Below the pieces are notes generated by a model. The model worked only from the letters and a program-made list of their open reading frames with translations, was not told where the DNA came from and did no database searches. A stretch of 64,000 bases of DNA from assembly GCF_026571515.1 (NCBI RefSeq), contig NW_026855987.1, forward strand, positions 1 through 64,000. The letters are read 5' to 3'. Made by a program: the position numbers and the translations under genes. Position 1 is the first letter of the stretch. Each line of letters starts with the position of its first letter. This DNA is from Ruditapes philippinarum. Its lineage: Eukaryota. Of the stretch, positions 5,133 through 63,615 are shown piece by piece.

Positions 5133-5319
5133 NNNNNNNNNNNNNNNNNNNNNNNNNNNNNNNNNNNNNNNNNNNNNNNNNNNNNNNNNNNNNNNNNNNN
5201 NNNNNNNNNNNNNNNNNNNNNNNNNNNNNNNNNNNNNNNNNNNNNNNNNNNNNNNNNNNNNNNNNNNNNNNNNNNNNNNNNNNNNNNNNNNNNNNNNNNN
5301 NNNNNNNNNNNNNNNNNNN
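5133..5319. other. Assembly gap (187 N)
   Basis: Run of N. Confidence 1.
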
Positions 5320-10300: not shown

Positions 10301-10857
10301 CAGAGCCAGATTTTTCTACCACTCATTTGCAACATTATCTTACACAGCAATATAGAGATAGAATACGAAAACGACGTAAGAAGAATAGAAAACGAAATAG
10401 ACAAAGCAATACAGAAAATGAGAACCGTCGGCGGCGACAAGAAAGAGAGGCCCCGTATGTGTTACCTCCAGTTACAGGGCTAAATTACCACGAAAGAGAG
10501 GCCCCGTATGTGCTACCCCCAGTTTCAGGCCACAATTTCTACCAAAGGTCAAGGTCACCGACGAGAACACCACCGCCACCACCTCCAAGCCCGCCTCCTG
10601 CGTCTATGCATTATCCACCTCCGAGTCCATCACCCCCACTCACACAGTCTCCACCGCAATCAAGAAGAACGCCGCCCTTGACCCCGTCGGCACTTCCATT
10701 ACCGGATATAATACCACCTAGATATTCACCGCAACCTCAGTCTTCCGGCACGCCATCACCACCACCACCAACTCCACCTTTACACCAGCCTGCAATAATA
10801 CACGTGATTCCGTGCGGTGAAACATTTCAGGATGAACCGCCACCTTATTCTCCGTGA
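7370..10857 (+). CDS. MS4A/CD20-like four-transmembrane protein with long His/basic/Pro-rich C-terminal tail (~403 aa; exons 7370-7379, 8779-8942, 9303-9395, 9913-10857)
   Basis: Canonical AG/GT sites with consistent phases. Joined protein MEDVKRERALRYLNITGVSQCIVGVLLLILGVV...FYTGAFIGMAM|VLVQAVLGLAVF...GCI|MQTYCLMAIATNVGYLVAVLVV...AITIIVFICVGVLTSAIGLAIVC gives four hydrophobic helices and ends EPPPYSP*. The 10-nt first exon is the least certain part. Confidence 0.75.
9493..9651. mobile_element. Kolobok-like MITE family 2 (TTAA|AG...CT|TTAA) in intron
   Basis: ttaa-agcagcaagcccccagat ... atctagaggcttgcagct-ttaa. Confidence 0.7.
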
Positions 10858-41321: not shown

Positions 41322-42632
41322 TAGTTATACATGTATACATGTATATATAAAAAAGGGTCAATAAGGTTAGACATTAATTGTCATTGTTTACTATCCTAAA
41401 ACTCCATTGGTTTAAGGTTTATGTTACTCCTCTAAGTGAGTACAAAAGCATTGAAAGACATTTACTTCTATATTTGACAAATTTGTCGTTGCATAGGTTC
41501 CCCATCAGTTATTTTTAATTTAATACAAAAAATGCTGCACATAGCTGTATATACTGAAGACCAAACAAGCGGACAGTGAATGTATACTCTGAGTTCCTTG
41601 GACCCCTGAAAATAAAAATTTTGATAAAATAAGAAATAAGTTTATCAAAACAAAATCAGTTATAAGAGTTTTTTGCGGTTTACATCTTATCAAAACCCCA
41701 TAGGTCAGAGGGCAACTTTCCAGTCATGAGGTCCTACCAGACACACGTATCTGCACGCCAACTTGTGCAGAAGTATTCAGCAGTATGGGTATGTCGCCAT
41801 GACAATCTCACGGATTTGCCTGATAAATAATAACCTCTCTGAGCATTGGAACTTAACTTAATACGTTATTTAGTGGAAATTACACAAAAACAAATGAAAA
41901 TTAAGCAATTGACTGATCTATTCTGGAAATGAAGTAAAATACCAAATCCTCATCTTGAATATGCAATACCCCTTACTGACATTTAACGACCACCACTGGT
42001 ATAAAATCCTGGATACGCGACTGTCCCCTACGGTATTTTGAAAATGTTTAAGTTAATGGCCATTCAATTAATGATTTTGATAAGGAAATATTTTAAACAA
42101 GACAACATTATATCGCCATACCAAGTGCATAAATAGAAGGTAATATGCATGAAGAGCCCGTATCCCCAAAATGACGAAAATTGTCGATCATGTTTGATAT
42201 TTAAGATATTGTAAGTACAGAGTGTGATTGAAACAAAGTTTTTCAATTTTCAGGTCTAAAATTTATAAGATACTGGTAATGGGTGAACACTAGGTGTGTA
42301 AAGCATTTAAATGATATGACCTTGGTACCCAATAAACTACATTCATATTTTGTTTCGATACGATGTGTTCTTATTAAAAGTAAACGTTCTATCCTTACCT
42401 CAATTTTTAAAATGTTCAAAATTGTTTCAGTGAAGGCGGAAATGTATGGTAACTGGACAGAATAACCATTCGCATAATGGTGAAATGAATGCACTGACTC
42501 AATTGATTTTTTGATGCGGAGAAGCATAATTAAATATTAATTATTAATCACGTGATCATCGTTTTAAGTTTATGCAGCAATGCTTGAAATGTAAAAGTAA
42601 CCCAGATGAATAACTCTACTCCAAATACCTTT

Positions 42633-45600
42633 TTAAGACTTTATTATTTTGTCCCTTTTCTCTTTATGTTTAACTTTTCTTCCTTTTTCTTGCTTATCTT
42701 CTCCTTTTGCCATTGTACCTAAAATAACATCGCCTAATAAACTCATAATATTAATTTCCCTTTCTTTGCAAATAAAATAAATTTTGGCGTAGATGGTATA
42801 CAGGTCAATAGTTATACATGTATTCTTATATTCACCTGCTGGTAATATAAAGATATTCAATGTAAGAAATAACTATCCACACTTTGCAAAATGCCATAGG
42901 GCAAAGGGTTTAGTCATATTAATGCAAATGACTTTCACATTCTTGCTGTTTAAAACGTTTTAGGTCATATGTTGCAATTACAGCCTTTTGATGGTGAGCT
43001 GAGGGATGGCTAGCTGTACGCTTTTGGATTATGTCAGACCGGAGCGTGCGTTTTGATAGATTCAGCAATCTTAACTATTCAAACACAGAGGACCATGATG
43101 AATTTTATACAACACCTTGTTTTTGTGACAAATTGACTTTCTTCCTTTCTTCTATGACCATCTTTTTGTAGGACTCATCACATGGGTGATCCCATATACT
43201 CTCTCCAGTAACAAAGTTGAAGTAATAAATATCGCCACCTGGATCTTTGCTGCATTATAACAAAACCATATCATGAAAATAAGTCATTGATGTTGCACAT
43301 AAAAATATATTCCAGACCGTAACCATTTTTATAACAATAAACACAGCATCAGCTGAGTGATGTGATGTGATATGATAGGATGTCGCGTTATCGCATGTAT
43401 GGTTACATCAATTTAGCTGGGAGAGAATTTGAGAAATCACAACATCGATCCTTTGCTATTTCCGTTCAAATAGTGACAATGCGATTAAATGATTTGACGC
43501 AAAGTTACATCTTAGAAGAACTGGTAATGGGTCGTTCAATCATGAATTTTTTAAGCACTTCATTCGTCAACAACTCATACCATTGGATATCATTTGATAT
43601 ATAAATACATTGTATGCCATAAAAAGCTTTTGAAATATTTTGAAATTTCAAGATGTCGTCGTGCTAGTATTATAAGGTCCTATCTCCATTTTCATGAAAA
43701 TTGAGTATGATATACCACTGGATTCAGAATTAAAAGATCTATCTCCAGGTGGTTTCCATTTATGCATGAGGTTACCCTGCTTGATATAATAGCATGTATA
43801 TCATTTTCCATTTTCGAAAATAATAGTTGAATTAATTATTATGTTGCTCTATGTCCATGAGCCAATCAGTGATTGTGTGCGAGGTCATGTGACAGATTTT
43901 GCTTTGTCAAAAAGCATTGACACCATTGCTTAAACTGGCTACCAGAAGTAAATTAGTTTTTAGTATCATATTTGATAAATTGGTAGGAAATATTACCATT
44001 AAGTCAAAGCAAAACCTTTTAATCTTTTAAAAGAGATAATGCCATTATATATGGTTACCGCCTTTAAAATATAAATGGTTATAAACACTACTCCTGGAGA
44101 TAGGGTATTGTAATTTTAAAGAGAAATTTTTTATTTTGTTTTAATATTTTCTAAAACATGGCAATAAATGGAAGGCAGTGTTGTTTAAGGCTAATGTACT
44201 TATTCTGAAACATTTTAATCATCTATTTGAGTTATCAAAAAAAAATTAACAAGGTATCGTGAAAAAAGTCGTTATAAATTTTATAAAATATAACTTTTGA
44301 ACTATGGATATATTCGGATGATTGAATTTCGGTTATAGTTGTTGTTTCTTGTTTTAATATACTGTCTTCTATATAACCAACGGTTGTTGTAGTATAAGAT
44401 ACTTTAATTGTTTCAGAGATTAGAGTGTGTTTCATTGAATGCAGATGCCAGAACATATACTAGTGTTTATTTTGAGATTTCTTCCATTAGAATTTTTACT
44501 TGACAGTGTTTCATTAACATGTTAAAGACTCCACAACCGCGCATTAAATGTTTTTGCCTTTTATGAGAAATTTTGAATTTTCTTTTCCATTTAGCTTAAA
44601 CGATAGAGGCACCCACAATATTTTCCAACATGCTCGTGGGCTTAAACTATTTTTAATTCCATGAATATTCATCTTGTTCAACATTTAAAATTTACCAATG
44701 ATTTTAGTTCGCTCAGTCACTGTATATCAACATATTGGTTAGATATTTCAGACAGTCCAATTTTATAATTGTCACATCTAGAATAAAACTTAAAGTCTCA
44801 CATTGCAGACTTAAACAACTTTCCTGCGATTAGATTATGTCATCAACTACTGTCAATTACTAGTATATATTTTTTCTCATGCAAATGTTATCAGGTGAAC
44901 AATCAAGTTCCTTTAAAACTTTTATTTTCACTCTTATTGGCAGAAAAGGAGGATCACATATAGTTTAAAGAACTTATTGCAAATGGTTACATTGACTGTT
45001 CCTTTCATAGTTTTCAAAATGAGTAAAGTTTCTTTCAGGTGAAAGAAGTTTTTGCAAATCCTCCAATCTATCATTATGTTTTTGTAGTATGTGCTGCCTA
45101 TTAAATTGTGACAGGAGTTGTTGCATTTTTATTGTAAATCTATCGAGGGCATTTTTTTAACATTTTGGTCTTTTTAACAGAGAGAGATAAAATCAAGAAT
45201 TAATTCAAGACAAAGTAACAGATAAACATGTTAAAATTTCCATTTTATCAGAGAGTTGATTTTATATTCAGTTTGTGTCTGTAACTAAGTGAATAAAGTG
45301 TTTTTGTTCGTTAATATTGCAGAATTTTTTTAGGTTGGAAAAACTATTGCCTTATAGTTATATGATAAATATTTAAAGTGATTGTGTTGAAATCTTTTGT
45401 TTCAGTTTTGTAAAAATTCACAATGCAGGTAAAGTACAAGTAGTTTATTGCGATCTATTACAAAACTTGTATGTTACTGATGCCAACAGGTGAAATAATT
45501 TATTCAAATTTATTTCTTTGTCACAAGTTATATCAAAATGTGTAGCTGAAAGATAAAAATACAAGTATTGACCAGAATTTTTAGTTTGTTTATACAAATA

Positions 45601-46227
45601 CCATAATAATCCTATTTGCTTTCATTAGAATTGAACATATTTATTAGTTTTAAAATATCCTATATCCTAGTTCATACTATCCTGGGCAGTTTTAAAACGC
45701 TCTATCTCCGTGTGCAACATAATTCTAAGCTTCCGGCAAGTACAAATAAGCAAAAAGCTCTATCTCAAAATGAAAAATCCGGTTTTAGAAAATATCTCTA
45801 AAGATATCGTGTAAAATCTTTGTTTGCAAGTTATGATAGAACATAATAATGATTCATTCAAAAAATCTCCATCATTACATGGTCTAGTAACATTTTTCTG
45901 TTAACTAAAATTTAAAGCTCGATTTCCCGCAATGTTACATAATGGCACTTAGGACCTTATTATACTAGCACGACGATGTTATGTTTATTGTTGGCCGTTT
46001 GACTTCAATCACATGTATGTATTAATATAGAAAAATATTTTTATTAGAAAAACATACCAAGGTTTCCAATGTTCAGGAAGTGGAGCATTGACACATTCTC
46101 TGGCAATCCAAAGCAAATGTGGTTCCTTGTCAGGGTCTATACCAATAAACTCGGCATACTCACAAATTTCATCCTCGGTATGAACATCAAAAGCTTCCTC
46201 AAGGATCAGCTGGTCGTTTATCATCAT
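42633..46227 (-). CDS. CEP164: CEP164-like N-terminal/WW module A (terminal; exons 46227-46058, 43249-43116, 42718-42633)
   Basis: [11 protein letters not shown]...[30 protein letters not shown]|[37 protein letters not shown]...|[13 protein letters not shown]...KS*. Matches the CEP164 N-terminus (DQLVLEE, GIDP, WKPCQD, YYFNF, WDHPCD). Confidence 0.85.
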
Positions 46228-49200
46228 CTTGAAGAGAGTTAATAGATTTGATAAGTAAGTCTCCTGATAGATTAACTGCTATATTTTCTGTTTCGATTTA
46301 CAGCAAAGCAAAATAAAATAAATAAATACCACCCTTTTGATTATAATTAATATTAGGTAAGCAAGGCTTATTTATGTAAAATACACGACCCATCTAACCA
46401 GGGGCAGGAACTTGTTACACGACAGATGTTTTTCCAAATAATAAGTCGCGTTCCCAACCTCATCTGATGATTTTATGTTATGAGAAATGAGGGCAGGAAG
46501 TGTAAAATGGAAGTGTTACTTATTCTCAAATACCAAGTTTCAACAACATTTCATACTATTATACTGTTTGGTAACACAAGAAGGTGATTAAAAGAGTAAA
46601 TCTTTTTGCAATTTCTTAAAATTACTTTGAAAGTTTCCCGTTGAAATAAAAGAGGAAAGAAATGATAAATTTAACATAATTGTTTCAGATACAATCACCT
46701 GTGACGGTTTGTCTTTTCCCTTTTTTCTTTTTCTTTCATCTTTTCCTGTCTTGTCAATGTCTTTTTTGTTTGTTTCTGTCTTGTCAATGTCTTTTTTGGT
46801 TGTCATTTTATCTGCAAAATTTATCTCATACAATAATTAGTGTCACAGTTCCAATTCCTTTTTTTATATAAAAACTTAAACAAATTATTTCTATGTGTCT
46901 ATATTTCCGGAGTGTTTTTGTACGCCGATTTGAATACTTTTTGTCATATCTCCGTAGTCCGTCAACATAACGGCTTTCCTGAATAAGTTTCCAGTACTTG
47001 CCAATGTCTCCACAAGTGACTGACTATTGATCTGACATGGTGATGAGAAAGAACCAAACGATCATAAGAGTAATGTCACAGATCTATAACTGTAGAGAAA
47101 TTACGCCCCGCCCGATGGTCGGACTAGCGATGTCTAGATTACTTATTCGATGCTCTCCCTATTGAGCACACATCAAGATTTTAGCCACGAGAAAGGTCAA
47201 TGATTTTACAATTAGATGATAACTTATATGAACTGCACAATTGTCTAGTAAAAAATACATATATCAAATATATGTTATTATTGGTCACATTGTGCCACAT
47301 CATTCTTGTTATTGGCTAATATATGTTGTACCTTGTGTTTGTGACAATTTGACTTTCTTCCTTTCTTCTATGACCATCTTTTTGTAGAACTCATCACATG
47401 GGTGATCCCATATACTCTCTCCAGTAACAAAGTTGAAGTAATAAATTTCGCCATCTGGATCTTTGCTGCATTATATCAAAACCATATCATGAAAATAAGT
47501 CATTGATGTTGCACATAAAAATATATTCCAGACCGTAACCATTTTCATAACAATAAACACAGCATCAGCTGAGTGATGTGATGTGATATGATAGGATGTC
47601 GCGTTATTGCATCAATTTAGCTGGGAGAGAATTTGAGTAGTCACAACATCGATCCTTTACTATTTCCATTCATAGAGCAACAATGCAATTAAATGACTTG
47701 AGGGAAAGTAACTTCTTAGAAGAACGGGTAATGGGTCGTTCAATCATGAATATTTCAAGCACTTCATTCGTCAATAACTTTGACATTCTCTTTCTTAAAA
47801 CTGTAAACTGACAACATCCGTTAAAACTTCAATTCTAAGGGACACTCATTATGTTATCATATTTCATAAAGAAACTATTGAAATAGATGTAATGTACATT
47901 GTTGGTTGGCCGTTTAGCCGTTTTAGTTCAATCACATTTGAGCCGCGTCACGACAAAACCAACATAATGCGTTTGCGACCAGCATGGATCCAGACCAGCC
48001 TGCGCATCCGCGAAGTCTGATCAGGATCCATGCCGTTCGCTATCAGTTTCTCTACTTGTAATAGTGTTTGTAAGCGAACAGCCTGAATCATGATCAAACT
48101 GCGCGGATGCTCAGGCTAGACTGGTTCCATGCTAGTCGCAAACACATTACGTTGGTTTTGTCGTGACACGGCTCATTTAATCCAGGTAAGCATTTTATAG
48201 AAAAATATTTTGATACAAAAAACAGACCATTTGATATCATTTGATATGTAAATACAATTTATTTCATAAAATACTACTGAAATATTTTGAATTTTCAAGA
48301 TGTAATGCTTGTTTGACTTTATAATTACATGTAAGTATTAATATAGAAAAATATTTTGATTAAAGAAACATACCACGATTTCCAATGTTCAGGAAGTGGA
48401 GCCTTAGCACCTTCTCTGGCAATCCAGAGCAAATGTGGTTCCTTGTCAGGGTCTATACCAATTAAATTGGCATACTCACAAATATCATCCTCGGTATGAA
48501 CATCAAAAGCTTCCTCAAGGATCAGCTGGTCGTTTATCATCATCTTGAAGAGAGTAAATAGATTTATTATAAGTGAGTCTCCTGATAGATTGAACTGCCA
48601 TATTTTCTATATTGATTTACAGCATAGCAAAATTGAATAAATAAATATCACCCTTTTGATAATTAACAATAGATAAGCAAGGCATATTTATGAAAAATCC
48701 ACGACACCACTAACCAGGGGCAGGATCTTGTTACACGACGGATGTTTTCCAAATAATAAGTCGCGTCTCCAACCATATCTGATGATTTTATGTAATAAGA
48801 AATGAAGGCAGGAGGTGTAAAATGGAATTGTCCTGATTGATGTTGTTGCCTGCATTGTTCAATGCGTTAGAAAAAAAGCGTTGTCAAATTTCTCGATTTC
48901 GTAGAAATATAAGTTATAAGGTATTTTAACGTCTTTATTATCTGCGTATTGTCATCTACTCATATTCAAAGGTTCTTTAGGCTTTCTTGTATACTATTTT
49001 ATAATTAGTTCTTCCGAACTCTACCTTTTCTTGCCTTACGTTTTAATTTCTATTATTGCAACAATATGAATCATCAGTTATTTATTGTCATCTGTTCGTA
49101 GCTCTTATTCTCAAATACATAGTTTCAACAACATTTCATAATATTATACGGTTTGGTAACACAAGAAGCTTAAGGTGATTAAATGGAGGATATTTGTTTG

Positions 49201-52200
49201 TTTGTGTGTAAGATCAAATTTTATTTCATCTCGTGAGCTTTAAAAACAGTATTCTCACGAGTGGCGTAGCCACGAGTGAGAATACTGTTTTTAAAGTTCA
49301 CGAGATGAAATAAAATTACATCTTACACAACAAACAAACACATTTTCTTTTTGTTTTATGCTTAAAAACAAGTTAAAACTAAATTTCCTTGATATTAATT
49401 TTAATATTAAAATCTGTTTTCCCCATTGGTAGCTTCTCTATTAGTCGAATTTTTCATAAAATACAAGAAGTTTTGGGCTGAAAATAAGTTCGACAATCAA
49501 CGTTAAATGGCGAGGATAATATTCATTTTATTCAAATAATATGAAAGATCGCTTGTTTTATTAATATAAACAAACAATTCTATTTGGAGAAAAAGTCAAA
49601 CCATCCATCCATATATCAGTTACTTACGGCGTATTTATATAAGACTTGGCTCTGTGAAATGTAAACGGCCGCCATTTTTAAAATTGTGTATTCCATTGGA
49701 GGAAAATAATTGTGTTTGATTCAGAGGGATATCATTTGGATTTGTTAGTCATACACCTTTTAAGAAGAAAGAAAACTTTTTTGAGGATTATTACAGACAA
49801 TGAATAAGTGTTGACAGATGAGTAAACATTCAAAATCGGCTATGGAACTGGAACACATGGACTTTTTGAAAGGCTGCCTTAGTCTGTAAGTCCTGACAAA
49901 CTTACGAACGCTAGGTTATTTACTTATTCTTCGGGCTAATGTCTGTCATTGCTTTTCAAGTTATTAGGCAGTTATTGCTCGTAGGATACTTAAATACGCC
50001 CAAATGTCATCAAGAGCAGTTCTGCATGTGGAAGGAATTGTATTTTTCAGACTGTAAACATGAAACAAATATTTAGAGATGATATTGGGTGATTGGTAAT
50101 TTGAATGAATTGAAGTAAGTTTTCTTCTTTTTATTACTTTTGAAATTTCAGTTATTTATCTATTTCAGCTTCGCTTTTCTCTAAATTTAAACAGCCCTGA
50201 CAATGTGAGAATTGTCAACACTAATAAAATTTAGGTACCGCATAGGGAAAATCTTTAGTGTCATCTTTGAAAAGTGTGAAATTATATTTTGATAATTTTC
50301 ACTGTGAAATTATCAAATATAATTTTCACGAATAAATCAGTAATCCAATGAAAAGCATAAAATAAAAAAATAAATCTTGCAATTTCTGAAAATTACTTTG
50401 AATCTTTTCCGTTGAAATAAAAAGAGGAAAGAAATAATAAATTTAACATAATTGTTTCAGATACAATCACCTGTGACGGTTTATCTTTTCCCTTTTTTCT
50501 TTTATCTTTTCCTGTCTTGTCAATGTCTTTTTTGGTTGTCATTTTATCTGCAAAATTGATGTCATACAATAGTGTCACAGTTCCAATTCCTTTTAATATT
50601 AAAACTTAAACTAATTATTACTATTTGTCTATTTTTCTGGAGTGTTTTTGTATGCCGATTTGAATACTTTTTGTCATATCTAGGTAGTCCGTCTACATAA
50701 CGGCTTTCCTGGATAAGTTTCCGGTACTTGCCAATGTCTCCGCATGCGACTGAAAATTGATCTGACATGGTGATTAGAACCAAATGATCATTAGAGTAAT
50801 GTCACAGATCTATACCTGTGGAGAAATTACGCCCCGCCCGAAGGTCGGACATTACTTATTCGATGCTCTCCCTATTGAGCACACTATATACACCCATGTC
50901 ACCTAAGAACATCAAGATTTAAGCCACATGAAAGGTCAATGATTTTACAATTAAATAACTTATATAAACTGCACAATTGTCTAGTAAAAATACATATATC
51001 AAATATATGTTATTATTGGTCACATTGTGCCACATCATTCTTGTTATTGGCTAATATATGTTGTACCTTGTGTTTGTGACAATTTGACTTTCTTCCTTTC
51101 TTCTATGACCATCTTTTTGTAGGACTCATCACGTGGGTGATCCCATGTACTCTCTCCAGTATTAAAGTTGAAGTAATAAATATCGCCATCTGGATCTTTG
51201 CTGCATTATATCAAAACCATATCATGCAAATAAGTCATTGATGTTGCACATAAAAATATATTCTAGACCGTAACCATTTTTATAACAATAAACACAGCAT
51301 CAGCTGAGTGATGGGATATGATAGGATGTCGCGTTATCGCATATATGGTTGCATCAATTTAACTGGGACAGAATTTGAGTAATCACAACATCGATCCTTT
51401 ACTTTGTCCATTCAAAGAGCAACAATGCAATTCAATGACTTGAGGCAAAGTAACATCTTAGAAGAACGGGTAATGGGTCGTTTAACATGAATATTTCAAG
51501 CACTTCATTCGTTAATAACTTTAACATTCTCTTTCTTAAAACTGTAAACTGACAACACCCGTTATTACTTCAATTCTAAGGGACACTCATTATGTTATCA
51601 TATTTCATAAAGAAACTATTGAAATAGATGTAATGTACATTGTTGCTTGGCCGTTTAGCCGTTTTAGTTCAATCACATTTAATCCAGGTAAGTATTTTAT
51701 AGAAAAATATTTTGATACAAAAAACAGACCATTTGATATCATTTGATATATAAATAAAATTTATTTCATAAAATGCTACTGAAATATTTTGAATTTTCAA
51801 GATGTAATGCTTGTTTGACTTTATAATTACATGTAAGTATTAATATAGAAAAATATTTTGATTAAAAAAACATACCACGATTTCCAATGTTCAGGAAGTG
51901 GAGCCTTAGCACCTTCTCTGGCAATCCAGAGCAAATGTGGTTCCTTGTCAGGGTCTATACCAATAAACTTGGCATACTCACAAATATCATCCTCGGTATA
52001 AACATCAAAAGCTTCCTCAAGGATCAGCTGGTCGTTTATCATCATCTTGAAGAGAGTAAATAGATTTATTATAAGTGAGTCTCCTGATAGATTGAACTGC
52101 CATATTTTCTATATTGATTTACAGCATAGCAAAATTGAATAAATAAATACCACCCTTTTTATATGCCCGAAAGAATTTCGGGCATATTATGTTATGCCCC

Positions 52201-54987
52201 CTGGCGTCCGTCCGTCCATCCGTCCGTTAGCAATTTGATTTCCGGAGGATAACTTAAGTTCCATTTGGCCCACAGTATTCAAACTTCATAGGATGATTGT
52301 CCATTTTGAGTAGAAGACCCCTATTGATTTTGGGTTCACAAGGTCAAAGGTCAAAGTCACTATGACCTTAAAACTGAAAACAGTTTCCGGAGCATAATGT
52401 AAGTTCCATTTGGCCCACAGTGTTCAAACTTTATAGGATGATTGTCCATATTGGGTAGAAGACCCCTATCGATTTTGGGGTCACAAGGTCAAAGTTCAAG
52501 GTCACTATGACCTTAAAACTGAAAACAGTTTCCGGGGGATAACTTAAGTTTCATTTGGCCCACAGTTTTCAAACTTCATAGGATGATTGTCCATATTAGG
52601 TTGAAGACCCCTATTGATTTTGGGGTCACAAGGTCAAAGATCAAGGTCACTATGACCTTAAAACTGAAAACAGTTTCCGGAGGATAACTTAAGTTCCATT
52701 TGGCCAACAGTGTTCAAACTTCATAGGATGATTGTCCATATTGGGCAGAGGACCCCTATTGATTTTGGGGTCACAAGGTCAAAGTTCAAGGTCACTATGA
52801 CCTTAAAACTGAAAACAGTTTCCGGAGGATAACTTAAGTTTCATTTGGCCCACAGTGTTCAAACTTCATAGGATGATTGTCCATTTTGGGTTGAAGACCC
52901 CTATTGATTTTGGCGTCACAAGGTCAAAGGTCAAGGTCACTATTACATTAGAACTGAAAACAGTTTCCGGGGCATAACTTAAGTTCCATTTGGACCACAA
53001 TATTGAAACTTCAAAGGAGGATTGTTTTGTGAAGGAGGTAATACTTATTTAATTCCCGTGTCTTACAAATGCTTCATCTTTACTAAAAAAAATCACTTTT
53101 GGGCATATAATGCTCCGCTTAGCGGTGCTCTTGTTTTAGTTATATTTTATATTAGATAAGCAAGGCATATTTATGAAAAATCCACGACACCACTAACCAG
53201 GGGCAGGATCTTGTTACACGACGGATGTTTTTTCCAAATAATACGTCGCGTCTCCAACCTCATCTGATGATTTTATGTAATGAAAATGAAGGCAGAAGGT
53301 GTAAAATGGAAGTGTCCTGATTGAGGTTCTTGTCTGCATTTTTCAATGCGTCAGAAAAAAGCGTAGTAAATTTTTCGATTTCGTAGAAATTTTACCTATC
53401 AGGTATTTTAACGTCTTTCTTATCTTCGTATTATCATCTACTCATATTCACGGACTCTTTAGGCGTTCTTGTATACTATTTTATAATTAGTTCTTCTGAA
53501 CTCTACCTTTTCGTGTCTTACTTGTTTCTATTTCTATTATTGCAACAATATGAATCATCAGTTATTTATTTTCATCTGTTCGTAACTCTTATTTTCAAAT
53601 ACCAAGTTTCAAAATTATTTCATAATATTATACGGTTTGGTAACACAAGAAAGTGATTAAAAGATTAAATCTTGCAATTTCTTGAAATTACTTGAAAGTT
53701 CCCGTTGAAATAAAAAGAGGAAAGAAATTATAAATATAACATAATTGTTTCAGATACCATCACCTGTGACGGTTTATCTTTTCCCTTTTTTCTTTTTCTT
53801 TTATCTTTTCCTGTCTTGTCAATGTCTGTTTTGGTTGTCATTTTATCTGCAAAATTTATCTCATACAATAATAAGTGTCACAGTTGCTATTCCTTTTTTA
53901 TATAAAAATTCCTTTTTTATATGAAAATTCCTTTTTTATATAAAAATTCCTTTTTTATATAAAAACTTAAACTAATTGTTTCTATTTGTCTTTTTTTCTG
54001 GAGTTTTTTTTTGTATGCCGATTTGAATACTTTTTGTCATATCTCGGTAGTCCGTCCACATAACGGCTTTCCTGGATAAGTTTCTAGTACTTGCCAATGT
54101 TTCAGCAAGTGACTGACTATTGATCTGACATGGTGATGAGAACCAAATGATCATTAGAGTAATGTCACAGATTTATAACTGTGGAGAAATTACGTCCCGC
54201 CCGAAGGTCGGACTAGCGATGTCTTGATTACTTATTCGATGCTCTCCCTATTGAGCACACTATATACACCCATGTCACCTAAGAACATCAAGATTTAAGC
54301 CACGAGAAAGGTCAATGATTTTACAATTAAATAAATTATATGTACTGCACAATTGTCTAGAAAAAAATACATATATCAAATATATCTAATTATTGGTCAC
54401 ATTGTGGCACATCATTCTTGTTATTGGCTAAGGATGATCCATGTATATGTTGTACCTTGTGTTTGTGACAAATTGACTTTCTTCCTTTCTTCTATGACAA
54501 TCTTCTTGTAGACCTCATTACATGGGTGATCCAATATACTATCTCCAGTAACAGAGTTGAAGTAATATATATCGCCATCTGGACCCTGGCTGCATTAGAT
54601 TAAGTCATATTATTATATTAATATGTAAATCTTAACATACATTAGTTACAATAATCGAAACGTGTCATGTTTTTGTAACGGACTAAGAAAAATGTTTATT
54701 ATTTCGGTTTCAGAAATACAATCTGTATAACTTCAGGAAGAGCTTTTACTTGCTATTTTTTATCACATTAAATAAGTGTTTACATTTGCTGATATAAATA
54801 TACAAACATACCTTTGTTTCCAAGTCTCTGGGAGAGGAGCATTTATTCCCTTTTTAGCAATCCAGAGCAAATATGGTTCCTTGTCAGGGTCTATACCAAT
54901 ACATTGGGCATACTCACAAATTTTGTGCTCGGGAGGAACATGGTTTTCATCATACTCCTCATCGAGAACCAGTTGGTCGTTTATCAT
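42633..54987 (-). CDS. Putative 12-exon gene encoding four tandem CEP164 N-terminal (WW) modules, ~526 aa (modules D-C-B-A)
   Basis: Exons 54987-54812, 54589-54456, 53846-53764, 52045-51876, 51200-51067, 50547-50471, 48543-48374, 47465-47332, 46811-46699, 46227-46058, 43249-43116, 42718-42633. Phases 2,1,0 repeat; total 1581 nt with no internal stop. Confidence 0.65.
43657..45975. mobile_element. 2.3-kb non-autonomous TIR transposon (Sola-like 4-bp TSD) in module A intron 1
   Basis: 26-bp TIR cgtcgtgctagtattataaggtccta (1 mismatch); TSD ATGT. Empty site caagatgtattgtttattg at ~62210. Confidence 0.85.
46699..48543 (-). CDS. CEP164: CEP164-like N-terminal/WW module B (exons 48543-48374, 47465-47332, 46811-46699)
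   Basis: ...EHWKSC|[31 protein letters not shown]...|[38 protein letters not shown]. Confidence 0.85.
46912..47167 (-). mobile_element. Old tRNA-SINE remnant in intron 2, shared by modules B, C (~50640-50880) and D (~54002-54257)
   Basis: Minus-strand tRNA-like head gctcaatagggagagc...; tail ...gatatgacaaaaagtattcaaatcggcgtacaaaaacac. Confidence 0.55.
47940..48174. mobile_element. Sola-like palindromic MITE in module B intron 1
   Basis: TSD ATTT; exact empty site caatcacatttaatccagg in module C at ~51670. Confidence 0.92.
49184..50370. mobile_element. 1.2-kb insertion with a long terminal hairpin (Crypton-like non-autonomous element, tentative)
   Basis: Absent from paralogous introns (aaggtgattaaa...taaatctt contiguous at ~46585 and ~53655). 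~145-bp palindrome at 49195-49340; ttttatgctt / aagcataaaa inverted pair. Confidence 0.65.
50471..52045 (-). CDS. CEP164: CEP164-like N-terminal/WW module C (exons 52045-51876, 51200-51067, 50547-50471)
   Basis: ...EHWKSC|[31 protein letters not shown]...|[26 protein letters not shown]. Confidence 0.85.
52156..53135 (+). mobile_element. Helentron/HINE (DINE-1/pearl-like) element carrying a 145-bp tandem array (~5.4 units)
   Basis: Subterminal IR atatgccc/gggcatat, (GTCC)n microsatellite, units at 52241, 52386, 52531, 52676, 52821, 52966, 3' hairpin gctccgcttagcggtgc. Inserted in a T-run; empty site at ~48655. Confidence 0.88.
53764..54987 (-). CDS. CEP164: CEP164-like N-terminal/WW module D (first; exons 54987-54812, 54589-54456, 53846-53764)
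   Basis: [59 protein letters not shown]|[31 protein letters not shown]...; second WW Trp replaced by Leu. Confidence 0.82.
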
Positions 54988-57900
54988 CTTCTTAAAAAAA
55001 GACAAGTTATCCTAATGCCTTGATAGATTATATTACTGTTAGATATTCTGGTGACTGTACTCAAATCTTCTTTTGCTGTAATTCAAAAGGATTGGTAGTG
55101 ACATCTGTAAGTTTCTATGGAACTTTTAAAGAAGTGTTTTTAATAAGTTGTATTAAATGTAACTAATACAATATAACAGGGAAATTAACACTCATAATAT
55201 AGAAATACTGTCATATCATCATCATTATTATCTCAGTGTGTCGGACAATTAAGGCTGCAAATTTCTTCAATAAGTCTCATTACACTTTATCAGAAACAGA
55301 AAGCGCACATCGTTCTTAAATTGCATCATTCATTTCGCTTTGGTTTTAGAAATATTCAACGTTCCACCATCTTGTAAACGAACTAATGACTGTTATGTGG
55401 TTAAATTGGTACCTGAACAATAAGCATATGAACTTCATGATACCAACCAACTGCATACGCATATATATATACATGCCTTGTATATAACATTAAATTTCTT
55501 TTAATCAAAAACACTCATTGTACTTACAAACATATCCATGTATAAACATATACACTGCCAACTTTAAGCCAACTATATGAATATATTCTTAAGGTAAAAA
55601 CGGTAACATACTCAAAAAATGTGCACACTTGTAGGTTTGAACTCGGAAAAACCATGCATGTTTATAACCTGAGATCTTCATAATCTGAACGCTACTTAGA
55701 TTTACGTGTTTACATATATTCTTCTATATTGAAATAAAAATGCAAAATGTAAAAATTGAAGAACTTGAACAACCCATTATATCATAATGGTACGACTTAT
55801 TAATGTAAACTGTAAACGTTATCGTGTTCGACTTATATACTCGTTGTGAAATAATCTATGTTTAAACTAACTGAACAATTATCGTCAATTTAAGAACTAA
55901 CAAGAAAAATATTACATACATTCGTATGGTATATAGACACGATTGCATTCTAACTTCTGTTAAGACTTTTTATGCTTGCTGCATGAAAGGTGTTATGTAA
56001 AATGAACAAACATGTCATCAGTTATTTTATATCTTTAAACATGTTCATGGAATGTAATAAATTTATTTGTGATATAAATCCGTGAATAAATGTATCATAA
56101 TATTAAAGTTGTATGCCTTCAGATGAGAAAAAATGATTTCAAGAAAAGAACAATGCACGATCAATTTATGCTTTAAAACATTTACACAAAATTACCCAAC
56201 TTCCACTGAACAGACCATATGAAAATCTTGCAAACACACAGAGATAGAAATATAAACAATAAAAACCCGTTTTTGCCCGAGTATTTCTTTGTTTTCTGAA
56301 CTCGTAATTCTGGGCACCAGTTTATAAAAAAACTTAGCTTACACGGACACGATCTTTCTTTTTCTTTTTTTTTTATCTTACAGAGCATTAAAAACCATTC
56401 TAATATATTAAAGGTAGAATTTCATGAAAACCATAGTCACAGATTTGAGAAATTATTATATATTTACAAAAAACATCATTATTTGTTATCGATTGATCCA
56501 ATAAAACCAATAAGATACGGTTTGTAAATATTTATTACAAATAAATATAAAAAGGTAATTCCTATCCATGTTAGCTATATTTATAATTCCCGCGTTAAGT
56601 CGCGGTGGTGATTGGGATAATCACGTGATACTGTAACAGCAGCCGTATTACGATACGAAATGCCTGGTCATTTTCGGACAGTTTCTTCAGCCGAAAATAT
56701 AATATGAAATTAATACTTGCAATTCAAAGTTTGTTTGCTACATAAAGATTATCGATTAACTAATTGCAAACCTTTTCATATTGATGTAATGTCATTGGCT
56801 GAAACCATTACGTAATCAATACACATTAAGGTGTTAACTAGTTTCATTAAAATTATGTCTTTAATCGGACATATAACAATTTTATTTACAAATAATTTGA
56901 TAAAAACAATCCCAGAATCATTTAAAATAATTGAATTCATCGAAAAATAATAAATGCATATAAATTGTAAATTTCTGTAACATGACAACTCACCCCCTAA
57001 ACAAAACATAATAGACTCAACCAAAACAAGCGCCTGCTTCTTTACCTAATTATGTAATTGCATGACCATGATTTGCAAACCAAATTTAAGAGCAAAAGCT
57101 ATTGTAAACTAAAAATCGTTAATGCATGATCTCAATAAAGATTGAAGAAAAATAAATTACCGCGTTAATATGATATGTAAATAGTCATAACGTATATAAT
57201 GAAATAAGAGCATATACCGTTGATACGAAGATCTAAGACTTGCTAATATGAATGTAAAACGTCTGTATGCTAATAGCGTTCTCCTTATAATAATGATATA
57301 TAAATAGTTTGTATATAGATAAGACAACATACCATTTTAAGTTACATATAAACCCATCTAACCGAAATATCCTGCATATTTTATTGGTATTGATCGTCCT
57401 ACACTCGTTCATATACCTGTTATTTATAATCTTCTGGATTACAAATAGTTCTACCACGTGATGTTAACAATGTTTGTATAAAGATCGATATCCATTGGAA
57501 AATTAAGTATACTTCGGTTATATTATGATTAAAAAGTACGTCTGACAATGAGTTGCCCAATAATATATAACCGATCGAAATATCATCAATAAGTCCGTTC
57601 TTATACTTTCATTTTGTACTTTCGGTTTTTAAAAACATAAATATAACTAAAAAGATAGTGTACTTTTAAATTTAAATTCAATAAATTGTCTTAATTTAGG
57701 TTGTCTTTACAAATATCAACATTGACTGACTACTGCATAACATGTAGCGTAGGTTAGATTGATCCGCCGTATTTATCCGAAGTTTGGTAGGAAGAATCGA
57801 AAAGTTGTGATTGAATTATCTATCCTGATCCGAACCACAGACACGTGGGATGTGTAGCTCAAAACGCCTTTAATATCAAAGTAAAATGTATATTTGTCAA

Positions 57901-60325: not shown

Positions 60326-60524
60326 GAGCCGCGTCACGACAAAACCAACATAGTTTGCGACCAGCATGGGTCCAGACTAGCCTGCGCATCCACGAAGTCT
60401 GATCAGGATCCATGCTGGTCGCTATCAGTTTCTCTATTTGTGATTAGACTGCGCGGATGCGCAGGCTGGTCTTGATCTTTGCTGGTCGCAAATGCACTAT
60501 GTTGGTTTTGTCGTGACGCGGCTC
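60326..60524. mobile_element. Sola-like palindromic MITE
   Basis: GAG...CTC termini, TSD AAAT; empty site near 42066. Confidence 0.88.
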
Positions 60525-61131
60525 AAATGCTTTTAATTAACAAGACAACATTATACCACCATACCAAGTGCATATATTTAAGGTTATGTGCATAAAGAGC
60601 CCGTGTCGCAAATAATGACGAAAATTCTCGATTATGTTTGATACTTAGTATGTTGTGAGTACAGTGTGTGATTTAAACAAACTTTTTTTTCAATTTTCAT
60701 GTCTGGAATACATGATATGTCGTGGTTTTGTTATTTAAAATGGGTGAACACCAGTAGGTATGTAAAGCATTCAAAGATATGACATTGGTTCTCAATAAAC
60801 TACATTCATATTTTGTTTCGATACGATGTGTTCTTATTAAAAGTAAACTTTCTATCATTACTTCAATTTTAAAATGTTTAAAAGTTTTTCAGTGAAGATG
60901 GAATACAGTTTGGAAACTGGACAGAACAACCTTACATATATTGGTGAAATGAAGGCACTGACTCAATTATTTGATGCGGAGAAGTAATATTGTTTCAGGT
61001 TATATATTTATTATTAACCACATGCATATCATTGTTAAACATTTAACATGTTGTATAGCATTTAAGTTTGAATTCTTGAAATGTAAAAGTAACCCAAATG
61101 AAAAAGCTATACCAAATACCTTTTTAAGACA

Positions 61132-62475
61132 TTACTTGTCCTTTTTCTCTACATGTTTATCTGTTCTTGCTTTTTCTGGCTTGTCTTCCCCTTTTGCCAT
61201 TGCACCTAAAATAATATCTTTATTAGCGTAGGCAGTATGCATGTCAAGAATTGTATTTTCATAGTCACATAAGCTAATAGCTATCTGAACTGCACAAAAT
61301 GTTATAAAGTAAATGGTTAATTTATATCAAAGCAAATGGCTTTCACATTCATGCTAATCTAGACCTTCGAGGTCATATGATGCCATTGCAGCAGTTTTAA
61401 TGGTGAACGGAAGGATGGATAGCTTAATGGTAGTGAATTAATTTCAGAAAGGAGCGTGCGTTTTGATAGATACAACAATCTTAAACACAAAAAACTTATG
61501 AGTTATATACAACACCTTCTGTTTGTTTCCTTTCCTCTATGACCATCTTTTTATAGAACTCATCACATAGGTGATCCCAAGTACTCTCTCCAGAAGCAAA
61601 GTTGAAGTAGTAAATATCGCCACCTGGATCTTGGCTGCATTGTAACAAAACCATATCATGAAAATAAGTTATTGATGTTGCACATAAAAAATATATTCCA
61701 GACCGTTACCATTTTTATTTCTTTAAAGAATGAATGGTAGGATATGAATTACTTTTTGTCGCTTAATCGCATGGATACTAGGTTACACCAATTTAGCTGG
61801 GAGAGAAATTGAGTTATCACAACATTGATCCTTTACTATTTCCGTTCAAAGAGCAACAATGCAATTCATTGACTTGAAGGAAAGTAACTTCTCAGAAGAA
61901 CAGATATATCGTTCAATCATGTATAATTCAAGCACTTTATTCGTCAATAACTCTGACATTCTCTTTCTCAAAAATGTAAACTTATAACATCCTGTATAAC
62001 TTCAATTCTAAGAGACACTCATTATGTTATAATATTTCATAAAGAAACTATTGAAATAGATGTAATACATGTAATATACATTGTTGGCAGTTTGGCCGTT
62101 TTACTTCAATCACATTAAATCCAGGTAAGTATTTTATAGAAAAATATTTTGATACAAAAACATACCATTTGATATCATTTGATGTTAATATTGAAATATT
62201 TTGAATTTTCAAGATGTATTGTTTATTGTTAGCCGTTTGACTTCAATCACATGTAAGTAATAATATAGAAAATATATTTTGATTAAAAAAACATACCAAG
62301 GCTTCCAATTTTCAGGAAGTTTAGCATTGACACCTTCTCTGGCAATCCAGAGCAAATGTGGTTCCTGGCCAGGGTCTATACCAATACATTCGGCATACTC
62401 ACAAATTTCGTGCTCGGTAGGAACATAGTTTTCATCATAATCCTCCTCAAGGATCAGCTGGTCGTTTATCATCAT
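61132..62475 (-). CDS. CEP164: CEP164-like N-terminal/WW module E (exons 62475-62297, 61634-61516, 61205-61132); probably the terminal module of a second paralog or a stand-alone mini-gene
   Basis: [60 protein letters not shown]|[39 protein letters not shown]|[24 protein letters not shown]. Confidence 0.85.
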
Positions 62476-62730: not shown

Positions 62731-63544
62731 AAAAATCAATCAATAAAATGAATTCTCATGATGTTTCAAATAATATGTTGCAGTCAAAGCCAATGGTAAA
62801 CAAAAATCAAGGTATTGAATAGAGGCGAAACATGTGTCCTGAATTATAGTAGAATCAATAGGTATTTTAAAAGAGTGAAGAACTTAAATAAAGAATTTGT
62901 ATCAATTAATAATTTGTAATAATATTTGTAATAATTATAAAATATATTTTTCTCACATTTTTCCATTTATTTCAAAAGAATGTACACCTTTCATTAACTC
63001 CATTGTTTTTAGCTAATTGCATCACTTTCCCGTTTATTTTTATTTATACATTTTATAGAAATATAATAATCTTAGCATAGACAAAGGTATAAATTCTGGG
63101 AAATCTTAATAAGACATTTCAGTAAAAATTGTGCCTGATTATATGTTGAAATGGCCATTTATTTAGCTTATCTAAATGTGACATTTAAAAAATTTGACTA
63201 GGTGTAGATCCAGCCTTAAGTAGTATAAACTATTTGAGTAGTCAATCATTCATAATCAAAGGGCTGCAAGCTCTGTGGTATTTTCTGATCTTTGCAACTA
63301 AATCGTACTGTATTTCTGTATGCATTTTCCTGTATAAATTTATTTTTATATACTATTATTCATCTTGCAGGGCACCGAGATGCAGCGACTGCGTTTAGAT
63401 TTTTTACTGTAACAGTTTGAGTTTGATACATACGGAAATTTGCATGACCAGAGTTGCATCAAAAATCATTTATGTTATTTTTTATGACAGCCACAGTTTA
63501 TTCTTGCATTACGTGGCTTAAAAAAGACACTTAAAAAAATAGTT

Positions 63545-63615
63545 GTCTCGACTGGGATTTGAACCCCAGACCTCTCGTACCTTAGACGAGCACGTAACCC
63601 CTACACCACGGGGAC
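63545..63615 (-). pseudogene. tRNA-like sequence (SINE head or tRNA pseudogene)
   Basis: Minus strand gtccccgtggtgtagggg...ggttcaaatcccagtcgagac with A and B boxes; imperfect stems. Confidence 0.5.

What the first reader, a model, noticed from the sequence alone, without database searches (positions are those of the whole stretch)
42633..54987. Tandem-CEP164-NTD protein: four TTBK2-binding/WW modules spliced into one chain, with no coiled-coil anchor
Seen in sequence: four 3-exon cassettes with intron phases 2,1,0. Each linker exon ends KDKPSQ|gt in phase 0, and the next cassette begins at a pyrimidine-rich acceptor (ctctcttcaag|ATG) in phase 0. D-C-B-A therefore join into a 1581-nt ORF that stops only in module A's distinct terminal exon. 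Established knowledge: canonical CEP164 has a single N-terminal helical+WW domain that recruits TTBK2 to distal appendages to start ciliogenesis. Its long C-terminal coiled coil mediates centriole localisation, and over-expressed N-terminal fragments act dominant-negatively. Inference: this would be a multivalent, unanchored kinase-binding scaffold or decoy that could regulate cilium or flagellum assembly. I know of no described protein with this architecture.
Basis: partly seen in the sequence, partly recalled or inferred. Interest (0 to 1): 0.9.

Follow-up and report, generated by a model that had tools for sequence, protein, structure and literature searches.

The report
Tandem CEP164 head-domain genes
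A mollusc-like genome has two neighbouring genes built only from repeated copies of the kinase-recruiting head of the cilium protein CEP164, without its anchoring tail; the exons fit one four-module protein and oysters have an annotated look-alike, but the joining of modules in RNA is not yet shown here.

Summary
On the minus strand there are four 3-exon cassettes with intron phases 2,1,0. All 12 exons are open, every junction is GT/AG, and together they make 1581 nt including the stop. Each cassette's exons 1 and 2 match the solved human CEP164 N-terminal domain best.

F ends in a linker exon and E in a terminal exon, the same grammar as D-C-B-A.

A complete canonical CEP164 lies on another contig. 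This contig has nothing of CEP164 past residue about 110. The linker donor and the acceptor before each ATG are inherited from canonical exons 1-3.

The architecture is not unique. RefSeq lists uncharacterized 3-4-module oyster proteins (LOC105317981), which arose independently, and protists have such proteins too. No paper I found describes any.

The modules are expressed and intron 1 is spliced in B and E. Exon-3-to-exon-1 joints could not be seen, because transposon joints swamped the single read-laying run.

Older branches show purifying selection. Recent ones look neutral, and module D has lost two ligand-binding residues.

I favour a multi-module chain at about 0.5. The decoy or scaffold function is inference only.

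The parts
54812..54987 (-). Module D exon 1 (ATG at 54987; helices 1-2 and first WW Trp); ends in phase 2
   Evidence: PDB match of the exon-1 type
54456..54589 (-). Module D exon 2 (WW strands and helix 3); degenerate, with the F77 and W84 equivalents replaced by S and L; ends in phase 1
   Evidence: (WW only 17.5 bits)
53764..53846 (-). Module D linker exon (Lys-rich, ends ..KDKPSQ|gt, phase 0)
52046..53763 (-). D-to-C spacer, the proposed intron; holds a 145-bp satellite of 5.4 copies
51876..52045 (-). Module C exon 1, acceptor ctcttcaag|ATGATG
51067..51200 (-). Module C exon 2 (WW, 38.3 bits)
50471..50547 (-). Module C linker exon (6-nt in-frame deletion relative to D)
48544..50470 (-). 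C-to-B spacer, the proposed intron, with a transcribed transposon insertion at about 49100-50400
48374..48543 (-). Module B exon 1
   Evidence: splice to exon 2 seen in run X1 (joint 47465/48374, depth 199)
47332..47465 (-). Module B exon 2 (WW)
46699..46811 (-). Module B linker exon (30-nt in-frame tandem duplication)
46228..46698 (-). B-to-A spacer, the proposed 471-nt intron; no AATAAA or ATTAAA; RNA depth about a tenth of the flanking exons in X1
46058..46227 (-). Module A exon 1
43116..43249 (-). Module A exon 2 (WW); followed by the terminal-type intron 2
42633..42718 (-). Module A terminal exon. It is a copy of canonical exon 3 with a stop (TAA 42635-42633) 6 nt before the relic donor AAG|gtattt
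42050..42632 (-). Sequence after the stop, homologous to the stretch after module E's stop (about 78-84% identity); likely 3' UTR or a relic of canonical intron 3
55003..57835 (-). Region upstream of D exon 1, homologous to the region upstream of F exon 1 (contig 67864-69572); candidate promoter and 5' UTR shared by the two genes and absent in front of the follower modules
62297..62475 (-). Module E exon 1 (second module of the sister gene F-E)
   Evidence: spliced E exon 1-exon 2 junction in X1 (table 5c, depth 103)
61516..61634 (-). Module E exon 2 (15-nt in-frame deletion; the P87 equivalent is L)
61132..61205 (-). Module E terminal exon, with a stop 12 nt before the relic donor

Best explanation
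The window holds one and a half of two neighbouring, lineage-specific offshoots of CEP164: gene D-C-B-A, and module E of gene F-E (F lies past the window's end).

Origin. An old partial duplicate of the first three coding exons of the canonical gene lost everything downstream. It gained a stop at the end of its copy of exon 3. It then grew by tandem duplication and unequal crossing-over of the three-exon unit.

Why the modules fit together. The unit keeps the canonical exon-3 donor, which is phase 0. It also keeps the AG that sits directly before the ATG of exon 1. Splicing from a linker exon to the next module is therefore in frame.

Most likely product. A 526-residue chain (about 250 residues for F-E) of CEP164 N-terminal domains joined by Lys-rich linkers, with no centriole-targeting part. 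Each cassette is a phase-0 to phase-0 unit of 381-417 nt, so skipping cassettes could give isoforms with fewer modules.

Inferred action. A soluble, multivalent binder of the Pro-rich motif that CEP164 normally captures on TTBK2. It would compete with, or cluster, the kinase away from distal appendages.

What is shown: exon anatomy, domain identity, origin, expression and intron-1 splicing. What is inferred: joining of the modules in RNA, translation, the ligand and the effect on cilia.
For: - Anatomy: 12 open exons, phases 2,1,0, GT/AG throughout, 1581 nt.
- Grammar repeated in two genes: linker exons (F, D, C, B) are always followed by another module, and terminal exons (E, A) always end an array with the same about 580-bp tail.
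- Only F and D share a 2.8-kb upstream region; follower modules lack it.
- Both exon-3 types are homologous to exon 3 of the canonical gene, and its phase-0 donor is retained.
- The B-to-A spacer is 471 nt and has no poly(A) hexamer.
- In run X1 the exon bins have depth 130-720, against 0-27 in introns and about 24 in the B-to-A spacer. The predicted intron-1 joints of B (depth 199) and E (depth 103) are present.
- Selection: dN/dS of modules against the canonical gene is about 0.09. Old internal branches carry 16 synonymous to 9 non-synonymous changes (P 6e-7 to 2e-4). The follower-module stem carries 5 to 3 (P 0.007-0.04).
- All 4 exonic indels are multiples of three, against 12 of 57 non-coding indels.
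- Precedent: Magallana gigas and M. angulata RefSeq models with 3-4 such modules in several isoforms; transcript-derived protist proteins with 2-3.
- Residues needed for TTBK2 binding in human (Q11, Y73, F77, W84; PMC8752127) are kept in F, C, B and A. E also keeps them but has Leu for P87.
Against: - No exon-3-to-exon-1 joint was seen. The joint table of the only read-laying run was filled by transposon joints.
- Contigs run unspliced across the acceptor of B exon 1: X3 covers 48521-48748, and X1 covers 48556-48889 at about 30% of exon depth.
- A exon 1 has zero depth in X3 while the B and C exons are covered.
- Two raw RNA-seq runs show almost no exon signal.
- X1 and X3 are only guessed to be RNA.
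- Recent branches carry 7 synonymous to 34 non-synonymous changes, which looks neutral, and module D has lost two binding residues.
- Unequal crossing-over keeps the frame by itself, so the open frame is weak evidence of selection.
- No protein model of this kind from this organism was found in the protein collections.
- No poly(A) hexamer lies within 1 kb after A's stop.
- Binding to TTBK2 was not tested.
Confidence: 0.5

Rival explanations
1. A cluster of independent mini-genes. Each cassette is transcribed from its own start in the spacer and translated from its own ATG-ATG. The product is a single-domain protein of about 130-150 residues that ends in the short read-through tail after the linker exon, or in the terminal exon for A and E.
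For: - Every follower module keeps ATGATG.
- Contigs are colinear with the genome across the acceptor of B exon 1, and the 334 nt upstream of it reach about 30% of exon depth in X1.
- A exon 1 is uncovered in X3 while B and C are covered.
Against: - Depth falls about ten-fold (X1) to fifty-fold (X3) directly after the linker donor at 46699, so most transcripts do not read through.
- The read-through stops lie 8, 11, 25 and 36 codons downstream in F, D, C and B, so they are not conserved.
- The B-to-A spacer has no poly(A) hexamer.
- The spacers are no better conserved than the introns.
- Only F and D share an upstream region.
- Oyster gene models join their modules.
Confidence: 0.2
2. A transcribed but decaying partial duplicate. 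The array was once functional. It is now drifting, its RNA is noise or regulatory at most, and no stable protein matters.
For: - Recent branches carry 7 synonymous to 34 non-synonymous changes, indistinguishable from neutral.
- Module D lost the F77 and W84 equivalents, E the P87 equivalent and C the C88 equivalent.
- F carries a duplicated exon 2 that would shift the frame if both copies were used.
- Signal is very low in two raw RNA-seq runs.
- Transposons and a satellite fill the spacers.
Against: - None of the 19 exon copies has a stop or frameshift, despite up to about 25% nucleotide divergence.
- All four exonic indels are in frame (P about 0.002-0.012).
- All splice sites are intact.
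- Exon depth in X1 and X3 far exceeds intron depth, with correct intron-1 joints.
- There was long purifying selection before the recent copies arose.
Confidence: 0.22
3. Assembly artefact: the tandem copies are collapsed or mis-joined alleles of one or two cassettes.
For: The genome is fragmented (15874 contigs). DNA-like runs hold only 41-49% of the sampled words of the stretch, which suggests high polymorphism.
Against: - The copies differ by 2-25% and carry copy-specific indels, a satellite and different transposon insertions.
- There is no second copy of the array elsewhere in the assembly.
- The chimeric pattern of B and C is what unequal crossing-over produces.
Confidence: 0.03

Closest known systems
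CEP164 (canonical distal-appendage protein; N-terminal domain solved as PDB 7NWJ, 7O06, 7O0S, 7O3B)
   Same: Each module is a full copy of the N-terminal domain, a three-helix bundle with an inserted WW. Exon 1 and exon 2 hit the human chain at E 3e-15 and 2e-12. The Lys-rich stretch after it is homologous to canonical exon 3. The residues shown in human to bind TTBK2 are kept in most modules.
   Different: There are four (or two) heads in a row. None of the about 1250 residues that follow in the canonical protein is present. The organism's own complete CEP164 lies on another contig.
Magallana (Crassostrea) gigas LOC105317981 and M. angulata LOC128155750, 'uncharacterized protein' (XP_034303042, XP_011413124 and isoforms; UniProt A0A8W8KPJ6)
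   Same: 3-4 CEP164 N-terminal domains separated by charged linkers of about 60-110 residues, 477-666 residues in all, no long coiled coil, several isoforms that differ in module number.
   Different: - The oyster modules form their own clade (100/99), while the modules here group with this genome's canonical gene. The expansions are therefore independent and the genes are not orthologues.
- Oyster linkers are longer.
- The oyster protein ends in a short helical-looking tail.
Protist proteins with repeated CEP164-type helix-WW modules (for example P0009 from a EukProt transcriptome, Eutreptiella P0160 and P0161, and P0008, P0011, P0077, which look alveolate-like by sequence)
   Same: 2-5 divergent copies of the same helix-plus-WW module in one chain, some from transcript assemblies. 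The module therefore tolerates tandem use.
   Different: The copies are ancient and divergent. They are often fused to IQ-motif arrays or other regions. They are unrelated in origin to the recent animal arrays.
Experimental CEP164 N-terminal fragments
   Same: A CEP164 head without the centriole-targeting part. When over-expressed in cultured cells it blocks cilium formation, probably by competing for TTBK2 (stated in PMC8752127, which cites Schmidt 2012, Chaki 2012, Cajanek and Nigg 2014, Slaats 2014).
   Different: Those are artificial, single-headed constructs. Here the headless-tail form would be encoded naturally and be multivalent. No functional test exists.
Classical tandem-WW proteins (NEDD4/WWP family, PRPF40)
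   Same: Several WW domains in one chain give avidity and selectivity for Pro-rich ligands. PRPF40 WW domains are the next-best PDB matches to exon 2.
   Different: Those WW domains are bare and sit beside catalytic or FF domains. Here each WW is embedded in the CEP164 helical bundle, and nothing else is attached.

Membership tests
CEP164 N-terminal domain (helical bundle with inserted WW) | Sequence match over the whole domain (human residues about 8-107) | tested here: met
   Exon 1 matches 7NWJ chain positions 12-68 (E 3e-15). Exon 2 matches positions 72-111 (E 2e-12). These are the best hits in the PDB.
CEP164 N-terminal domain (helical bundle with inserted WW) | WW signature (two Trp, aromatic YYF block, Pro) | tested here: met
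   Pfam WW scores 38.3 bits for C exon 2. Both Trp and the aromatic block are present in F, E, C, B and A. This is NOT met in D, where the second Trp is Leu and the F77 equivalent is Ser (17.5 bits). E has Leu for the Pro.
CEP164 N-terminal domain (helical bundle with inserted WW) | Binds the Pro-rich motif of TTBK2 | not testable with these tools
   Only residue conservation could be checked (Q11, Y73, F75, F77, W84 equivalents). No TTBK2 sequence of this organism was in hand, and a spliced module may not be sent to the fold tools.
Canonical CEP164 (distal-appendage protein) | Long coiled-coil middle and C-terminal centriole-targeting region | tested here: not met
   tblastn of full-length Solemya and Tubulanus CEP164 and four shorter CEP164-type proteins (one of them an N-terminal domain-SAM-U-box fusion) finds nothing beyond residue about 110 on the 83.7-kb contig. 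At least 19 colinear exon hits lie on C11606.
Tandem CEP164-head proteins of the oyster LOC105317981 type | Three or more head domains joined by charged linkers in one open frame, with no long coiled coil | tested here: met
   Exon-by-exon phase check gives four heads and three linkers in 1581 nt. The oyster proteins have 3-4 heads.
Tandem CEP164-head proteins of the oyster LOC105317981 type | Modules joined in mature mRNA | tested here: inconclusive
   Expression and intron-1 splicing were seen, and depth drops after the linker donor. No inter-module joint was listed, and some contigs are unspliced at the acceptor.
Tandem CEP164-head proteins of the oyster LOC105317981 type | Common descent (orthology) with the oyster gene | tested here: not met
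   In the exon-1 tree the oyster modules are monophyletic (100/99). F and D group with this genome's canonical gene (87/75). dS to the canonical gene is about 0.9. The alignment has only 59 columns, so resolution is low.

The most novel reading that the evidence does not exclude
Molluscs, and independently some protists, have repeatedly turned the TTBK2-recruiting head of CEP164 into free, multivalent, tail-less proteins. Module number would be tuned by unequal crossing-over and cassette skipping. These proteins would act as natural dominant-negative buffers or clustering scaffolds that set when and where TTBK2 can start cilium assembly, for example in multiciliated gill or larval cells or in sperm. 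The fast recent change of the WW surfaces could reflect a shift to new Pro-rich ligands.
Probability: 0.2. Interest if true: 0.8.

Novelty: new variant of a known kind. Interest (0 to 1): 0.55.

Why it matters
CEP164-TTBK2 docking is the switch that licenses cilium formation, and its failure causes human ciliopathies. The only known way to block it with the CEP164 head alone is artificial over-expression.

A naturally encoded, multi-headed, unanchored version would be an endogenous regulator of that switch. It arose at least twice in bivalve-like lineages and also in protists. It would also be a ready-made high-avidity reagent for TTBK2-type motifs.

The locus is a clean worked example of how keeping ancestral splice phases lets exon-block duplication build repeat proteins.

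If the array is only drifting, it is an ordinary partial gene duplicate and of local interest only.

Tried and rejected
- **Read laying.** I laid 46100-52090. Two transposon stretches (47900-48300 and 49100-50500) took nearly all reads and 889 of the 904 joint rows were not shown, so the inter-module joints could not be read. A narrower stretch free of transposons would have been the better choice.
- **Protein search with exon 1 alone.** It returned only genomic read-through ORFs and no transcript fragments.
- **Searches sized for 137-810 residues and the length-free profile search.** None found a multi-module protein from this organism.
- **Search for a processed retrocopy or any contig carrying the linker-exon/exon-1 junction.** The own genome (2 mismatches allowed) and the JGI metagenome contigs both gave nothing. 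This is uninformative rather than negative.
- **Literature.** No paper on LOC105317981 or on tandem CEP164 heads.
- **Bacterial promoter and terminator scan.** Irrelevant for a eukaryote; ignored.
- **Continuation of the gene into another domain, such as the SAM and U-box seen in Mya arenaria.** Rejected: no tblastn hit on the contig.
- **Module A's relic donor continuing the reading frame.** Rejected: A and E both have in-frame stops before it, in different frames.
- The joined protein was not built for, or sent to, any search, fold or complex tool, so no structure or complex prediction of a module was made.
- **Human-like hit.** One Logan-derived hit (P0231) looks like the human CEP164 N-terminus. 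I did not compare it or search further with it.
Full report
**What is in the sequence**

The window is G000 contig C4474, bases 1-64000 of 83721. It is AT-rich eukaryotic DNA with about 32% GC.

On the minus strand of 42.6-55 kb, the exon-bearing units recur three to five times; the exon copies were located by blastn. Reading the boundaries base by base gives four cassettes of three exons:
- D: 54987-54812, 54589-54456, 53846-53764
- C: 52045-51876, 51200-51067, 50547-50471
- B: 48543-48374, 47465-47332, 46811-46699
- A: 46227-46058, 43249-43116, 42718-42633

Every intron starts gt and ends ag, and the phases are 2, 1, 0. The third exons of D, C and B end ..KDKPSQ|gt. C, B and A start directly after ctcttcaag.

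Tracking the phase exon by exon gives no internal stop and 1581 nt up to the TAA at 42635-42633. I verified continuity by arithmetic on the separate exons. The joined model was not built for, or sent to, any search or fold tool.

**What the modules are**

Exon 1 of module C matches the solved human CEP164 N-terminal domain (7NWJ, 7O06, 7O0S, and the TTBK2 fusion 7O3B) at E 3e-15. Exon 2 matches its WW strands and third helix at E 2e-12, ahead of all other WW proteins. Pfam WW is passed at 38.3 bits against a cut-off of 26.9. Each cassette is thus one complete CEP164 head plus a Lys-rich linker.

A fifth module, E, lies at 62475-61132 in the window. A sixth, F, lies just beyond the window at contig 67849-66430.
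- F ends in a linker exon of the D, C, B type.
- E ends in a terminal exon of the A type, followed by the same about 580-bp tail as A (78-84% identity).
- F and D share about 2.8 kb of upstream sequence that no follower module has.

So there are two paralogous genes with the same grammar: a first module, one or more follower modules reached from a linker exon, and a closing terminal exon.

F also carries a local duplicate of exon 2. Only one of the two copies can be used without shifting the frame.

**Where it came from**

The genome has exactly seven exon-1 copies: six here and one on contig C11606.

The C11606 copy is the start of a complete canonical CEP164. At least 19 colinear tblastn hits to the Solemya velum protein cover residues 3-1369 between 123949 and 176820. 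Nothing on C4474 matches CEP164 beyond residue about 110. No SAM or U-box exons follow either.

Exon 3 of the canonical gene (about 126090-126182) is homologous to both the linker exons and the terminal exons. Its phase-0 donor corresponds to two things: the donor after KDKPSQ, and the unused AAG|gtattt that still sits 6 nt (A) or 12 nt (E) after the stops of the terminal exons. The AG directly before the ATG is also shared with the canonical gene.

The in-frame fit of cassette to cassette is therefore inherited, not newly evolved.

B and C have A-like first exons (95-98% identity). Their second introns and linker exons are D- and F-like (93-95%). That is the signature of unequal crossing-over between a first and a last module, as another first-stage note proposed. 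Such events keep the frame automatically, so the long ORF alone says little about selection.

**Selection**

Counts are summed over exons 1 and 2.
- Modules against the canonical gene: dS about 0.83-1.10, dN 0.07-0.12, ratio about 0.09. The offshoot is therefore old and was constrained for most of its history.
- Polarising changes with the canonical gene gives, as synonymous to non-synonymous counts:
  - 14:4 on the branch shared by all modules;
  - 7:4 on the first-module stem;
  - 5:3 on the follower-module stem (P 0.007-0.04 against neutrality);
  - 16:9 for the old internal branches pooled (P 6e-7 to 2e-4).
- The recent branches (D, C, B, A, F and their young stems) carry 7:34, which is what neutrality predicts.
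- Module D replaced the equivalents of human F77 and W84. E replaced P87 and C replaced C88. In human CEP164 the F77A and W84A mutants bind TTBK2 poorly (PMC8752127).
- No exon copy has a stop or frameshift.
- The four exonic indels (9, 15, 30 and 6 nt) are all multiples of three. Only 12 of 57 indels in the matching introns, spacers and the tail after the terminal exons are (P about 0.002-0.012).

The picture is long constraint followed by recent relaxation or diversification, with the frame still protected.

**RNA evidence**

Twenty runs hold part of the stretch; none is on record as RNA. Four raw RNA-seq runs of the same species label were also offered. I laid two raw runs and two contig sets on 46100-52090.

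The raw runs (4-6% sampled) show almost nothing on the exons.

The contig sets X1 and X3 are only guessed to be RNA, but they behave like RNA.
- In X1 the bins with exons have depth 130-720. Intron bins have 0-27.
- The exact predicted intron 1 of B appears as a joint (47465/48374, CT..AC on the plus strand, depth 199).
- Table 5c holds a contig whose inserted letters reproduce the spliced exon 1-exon 2 junction of module E (depth 103).
- Directly after the linker donor of B, depth falls from about 150 per bin (roughly 300 on the exon) to 24 in X1, and from 31 to 0.6 in X3. So most transcripts neither read through to the VIVSETIM.. stops nor end there with a tail.

Evidence pointing the other way:
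- The joints that would prove the chain were not shown. Of the 904 joint rows, 889 went unshown, and the few that were shown were almost all transposon joints.
- An X3 contig (48521-48748) runs unspliced through the acceptor of B exon 1.
- The 334 nt upstream of that acceptor reach about 30% of exon depth in X1.
- A exon 1 has no depth at all in X3.

The B-to-A spacer is 471 nt and has no AATAAA or ATTAAA. There is also none within 1 kb after A's stop, so this argument is weak. A search for a processed copy or any contig with the linker-exon/exon-1 junction found nothing.

**Comparison with what is known**

A profile of the seven exon-1 peptides, run against 1.84 billion representative proteins, finds 1880 relatives. 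Nearly all are ordinary CEP164 with one head, but some have several.

A search sized for mid-length proteins brings up Magallana gigas LOC105317981 (XP_034303042 with 663 residues and four heads; XP_011413124 with 491 residues and three heads; isoforms X1-X4) and M. angulata LOC128155750. All are named 'uncharacterized protein'.

In an exon-1 tree the oyster modules are one clade (100/99), while F and D sit with this genome's own canonical gene. The two arrays therefore arose independently (only 59 columns, so support elsewhere is weak).

Protist proteins with 2-5 divergent modules also exist, some from transcriptomes. A cichlid model with three near-identical heads may be an annotation artefact.

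I found no paper on any of these. The architecture is thus present in databases but undescribed.

**How it most likely works**

The CEP164 head binds a Pro-rich motif in the C-terminal part of TTBK2. The rest of CEP164 places it on distal appendages. Over-expressed head fragments block ciliogenesis, probably by competing for TTBK2 (PMC8752127).

A chain of three or four competent heads without a targeting region would be a soluble, high-avidity competitor or clustering scaffold for that motif, or for a new Pro-rich ligand, given the recent changes on the WW surface.

This step is inference only. Neither binding, translation nor any cilium phenotype was tested. The fold and complex tools could not be used on a spliced module.

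**Verdict**

- Observation: confirmed and extended.
- Interpretation: partly supported. The multi-module reading is the best single explanation (about 0.5).
- Rivals: single-module mini-genes (about 0.2), a transcribed but drifting relic (about 0.22) and misassembly (about 0.03).
- Novelty: a new, independently evolved variant of a family whose oyster counterpart is already predicted but uncharacterized.
The decisive junction test remains to be done.

Noticed in passing
G000:C4474:66430-67849 (locus L008 2430-3849), just outside the window: Module F, the first module of the sister gene. It has two copies of exon 2, 255 bp apart (67432-67299 and 67177-67044). The upstream copy is followed by the terminal-type intron start, the downstream copy by the linker-type one. 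Using both would shift the frame.
   Followed up: partly
window 21653-22291 (-): 213-codon ORF that matches the Pfam DOR family (TP53INP-like, PF14839; 98 bits, E 8.5e-28). Probably the main coding exon of a neighbouring gene.
   Followed up: partly
window 9859-10857 (+): 332-codon ORF with a hydrophobic N-terminal half, a His run and a very Pro-rich tail ending in a PPPY-type motif. No Pfam match. PPxY motifs are WW ligands; its nearness to a WW array is probably coincidence.
   Followed up: partly
window 47935-48100, with a related copy near 60400-60540: Short interspersed repeat inside intron 1 of module B. Its RNA depth is enormous (about 33000 per strand in run X21), with many internal joints and strand switches. 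It swamped the read-laying tables.
   Followed up: no
window 49100-50400: Insertion, apparently a transposon, in the C-to-B spacer. It is absent from the B-to-A spacer and is transcribed on both strands at depth 100-300 in run X21.
   Followed up: no
window 52239-53025: 145-bp satellite, 5.4 copies, 92% alike, inserted in the D-to-C spacer.
   Followed up: no
window 63544-63615 (-): tRNA-like element (Rfam tRNA, 34 bits) about 1 kb upstream of module E. It may be a tRNA-derived repeat.
   Followed up: no
window 46900-47900: In raw RNA run X21 about 8-13 reads deep on both strands across intron 2, exon 2 and intron 1 of module B alike. The matching part of module C has almost none. This may be an unspliced or antisense transcript, or a repeat. 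Unexplained.
   Followed up: no
proteins P0031 and P0168 (Mya arenaria): A CEP164 head fused to SAM and U-box domains. This is another re-use of the head in a bivalve, here joined to a ubiquitin-ligase module.
   Followed up: no
protein P0166 (Potamilus streckersoni): A gene model of the freshwater mussel CEP164 repeats the first about 18 residues of exon 1 after the Lys-rich stretch. This suggests a partial duplication of the same exon block inside the canonical gene.
   Followed up: no
window 5133-5319: Run of 187 N (assembly gap or masked). Left untouched.
   Followed up: no
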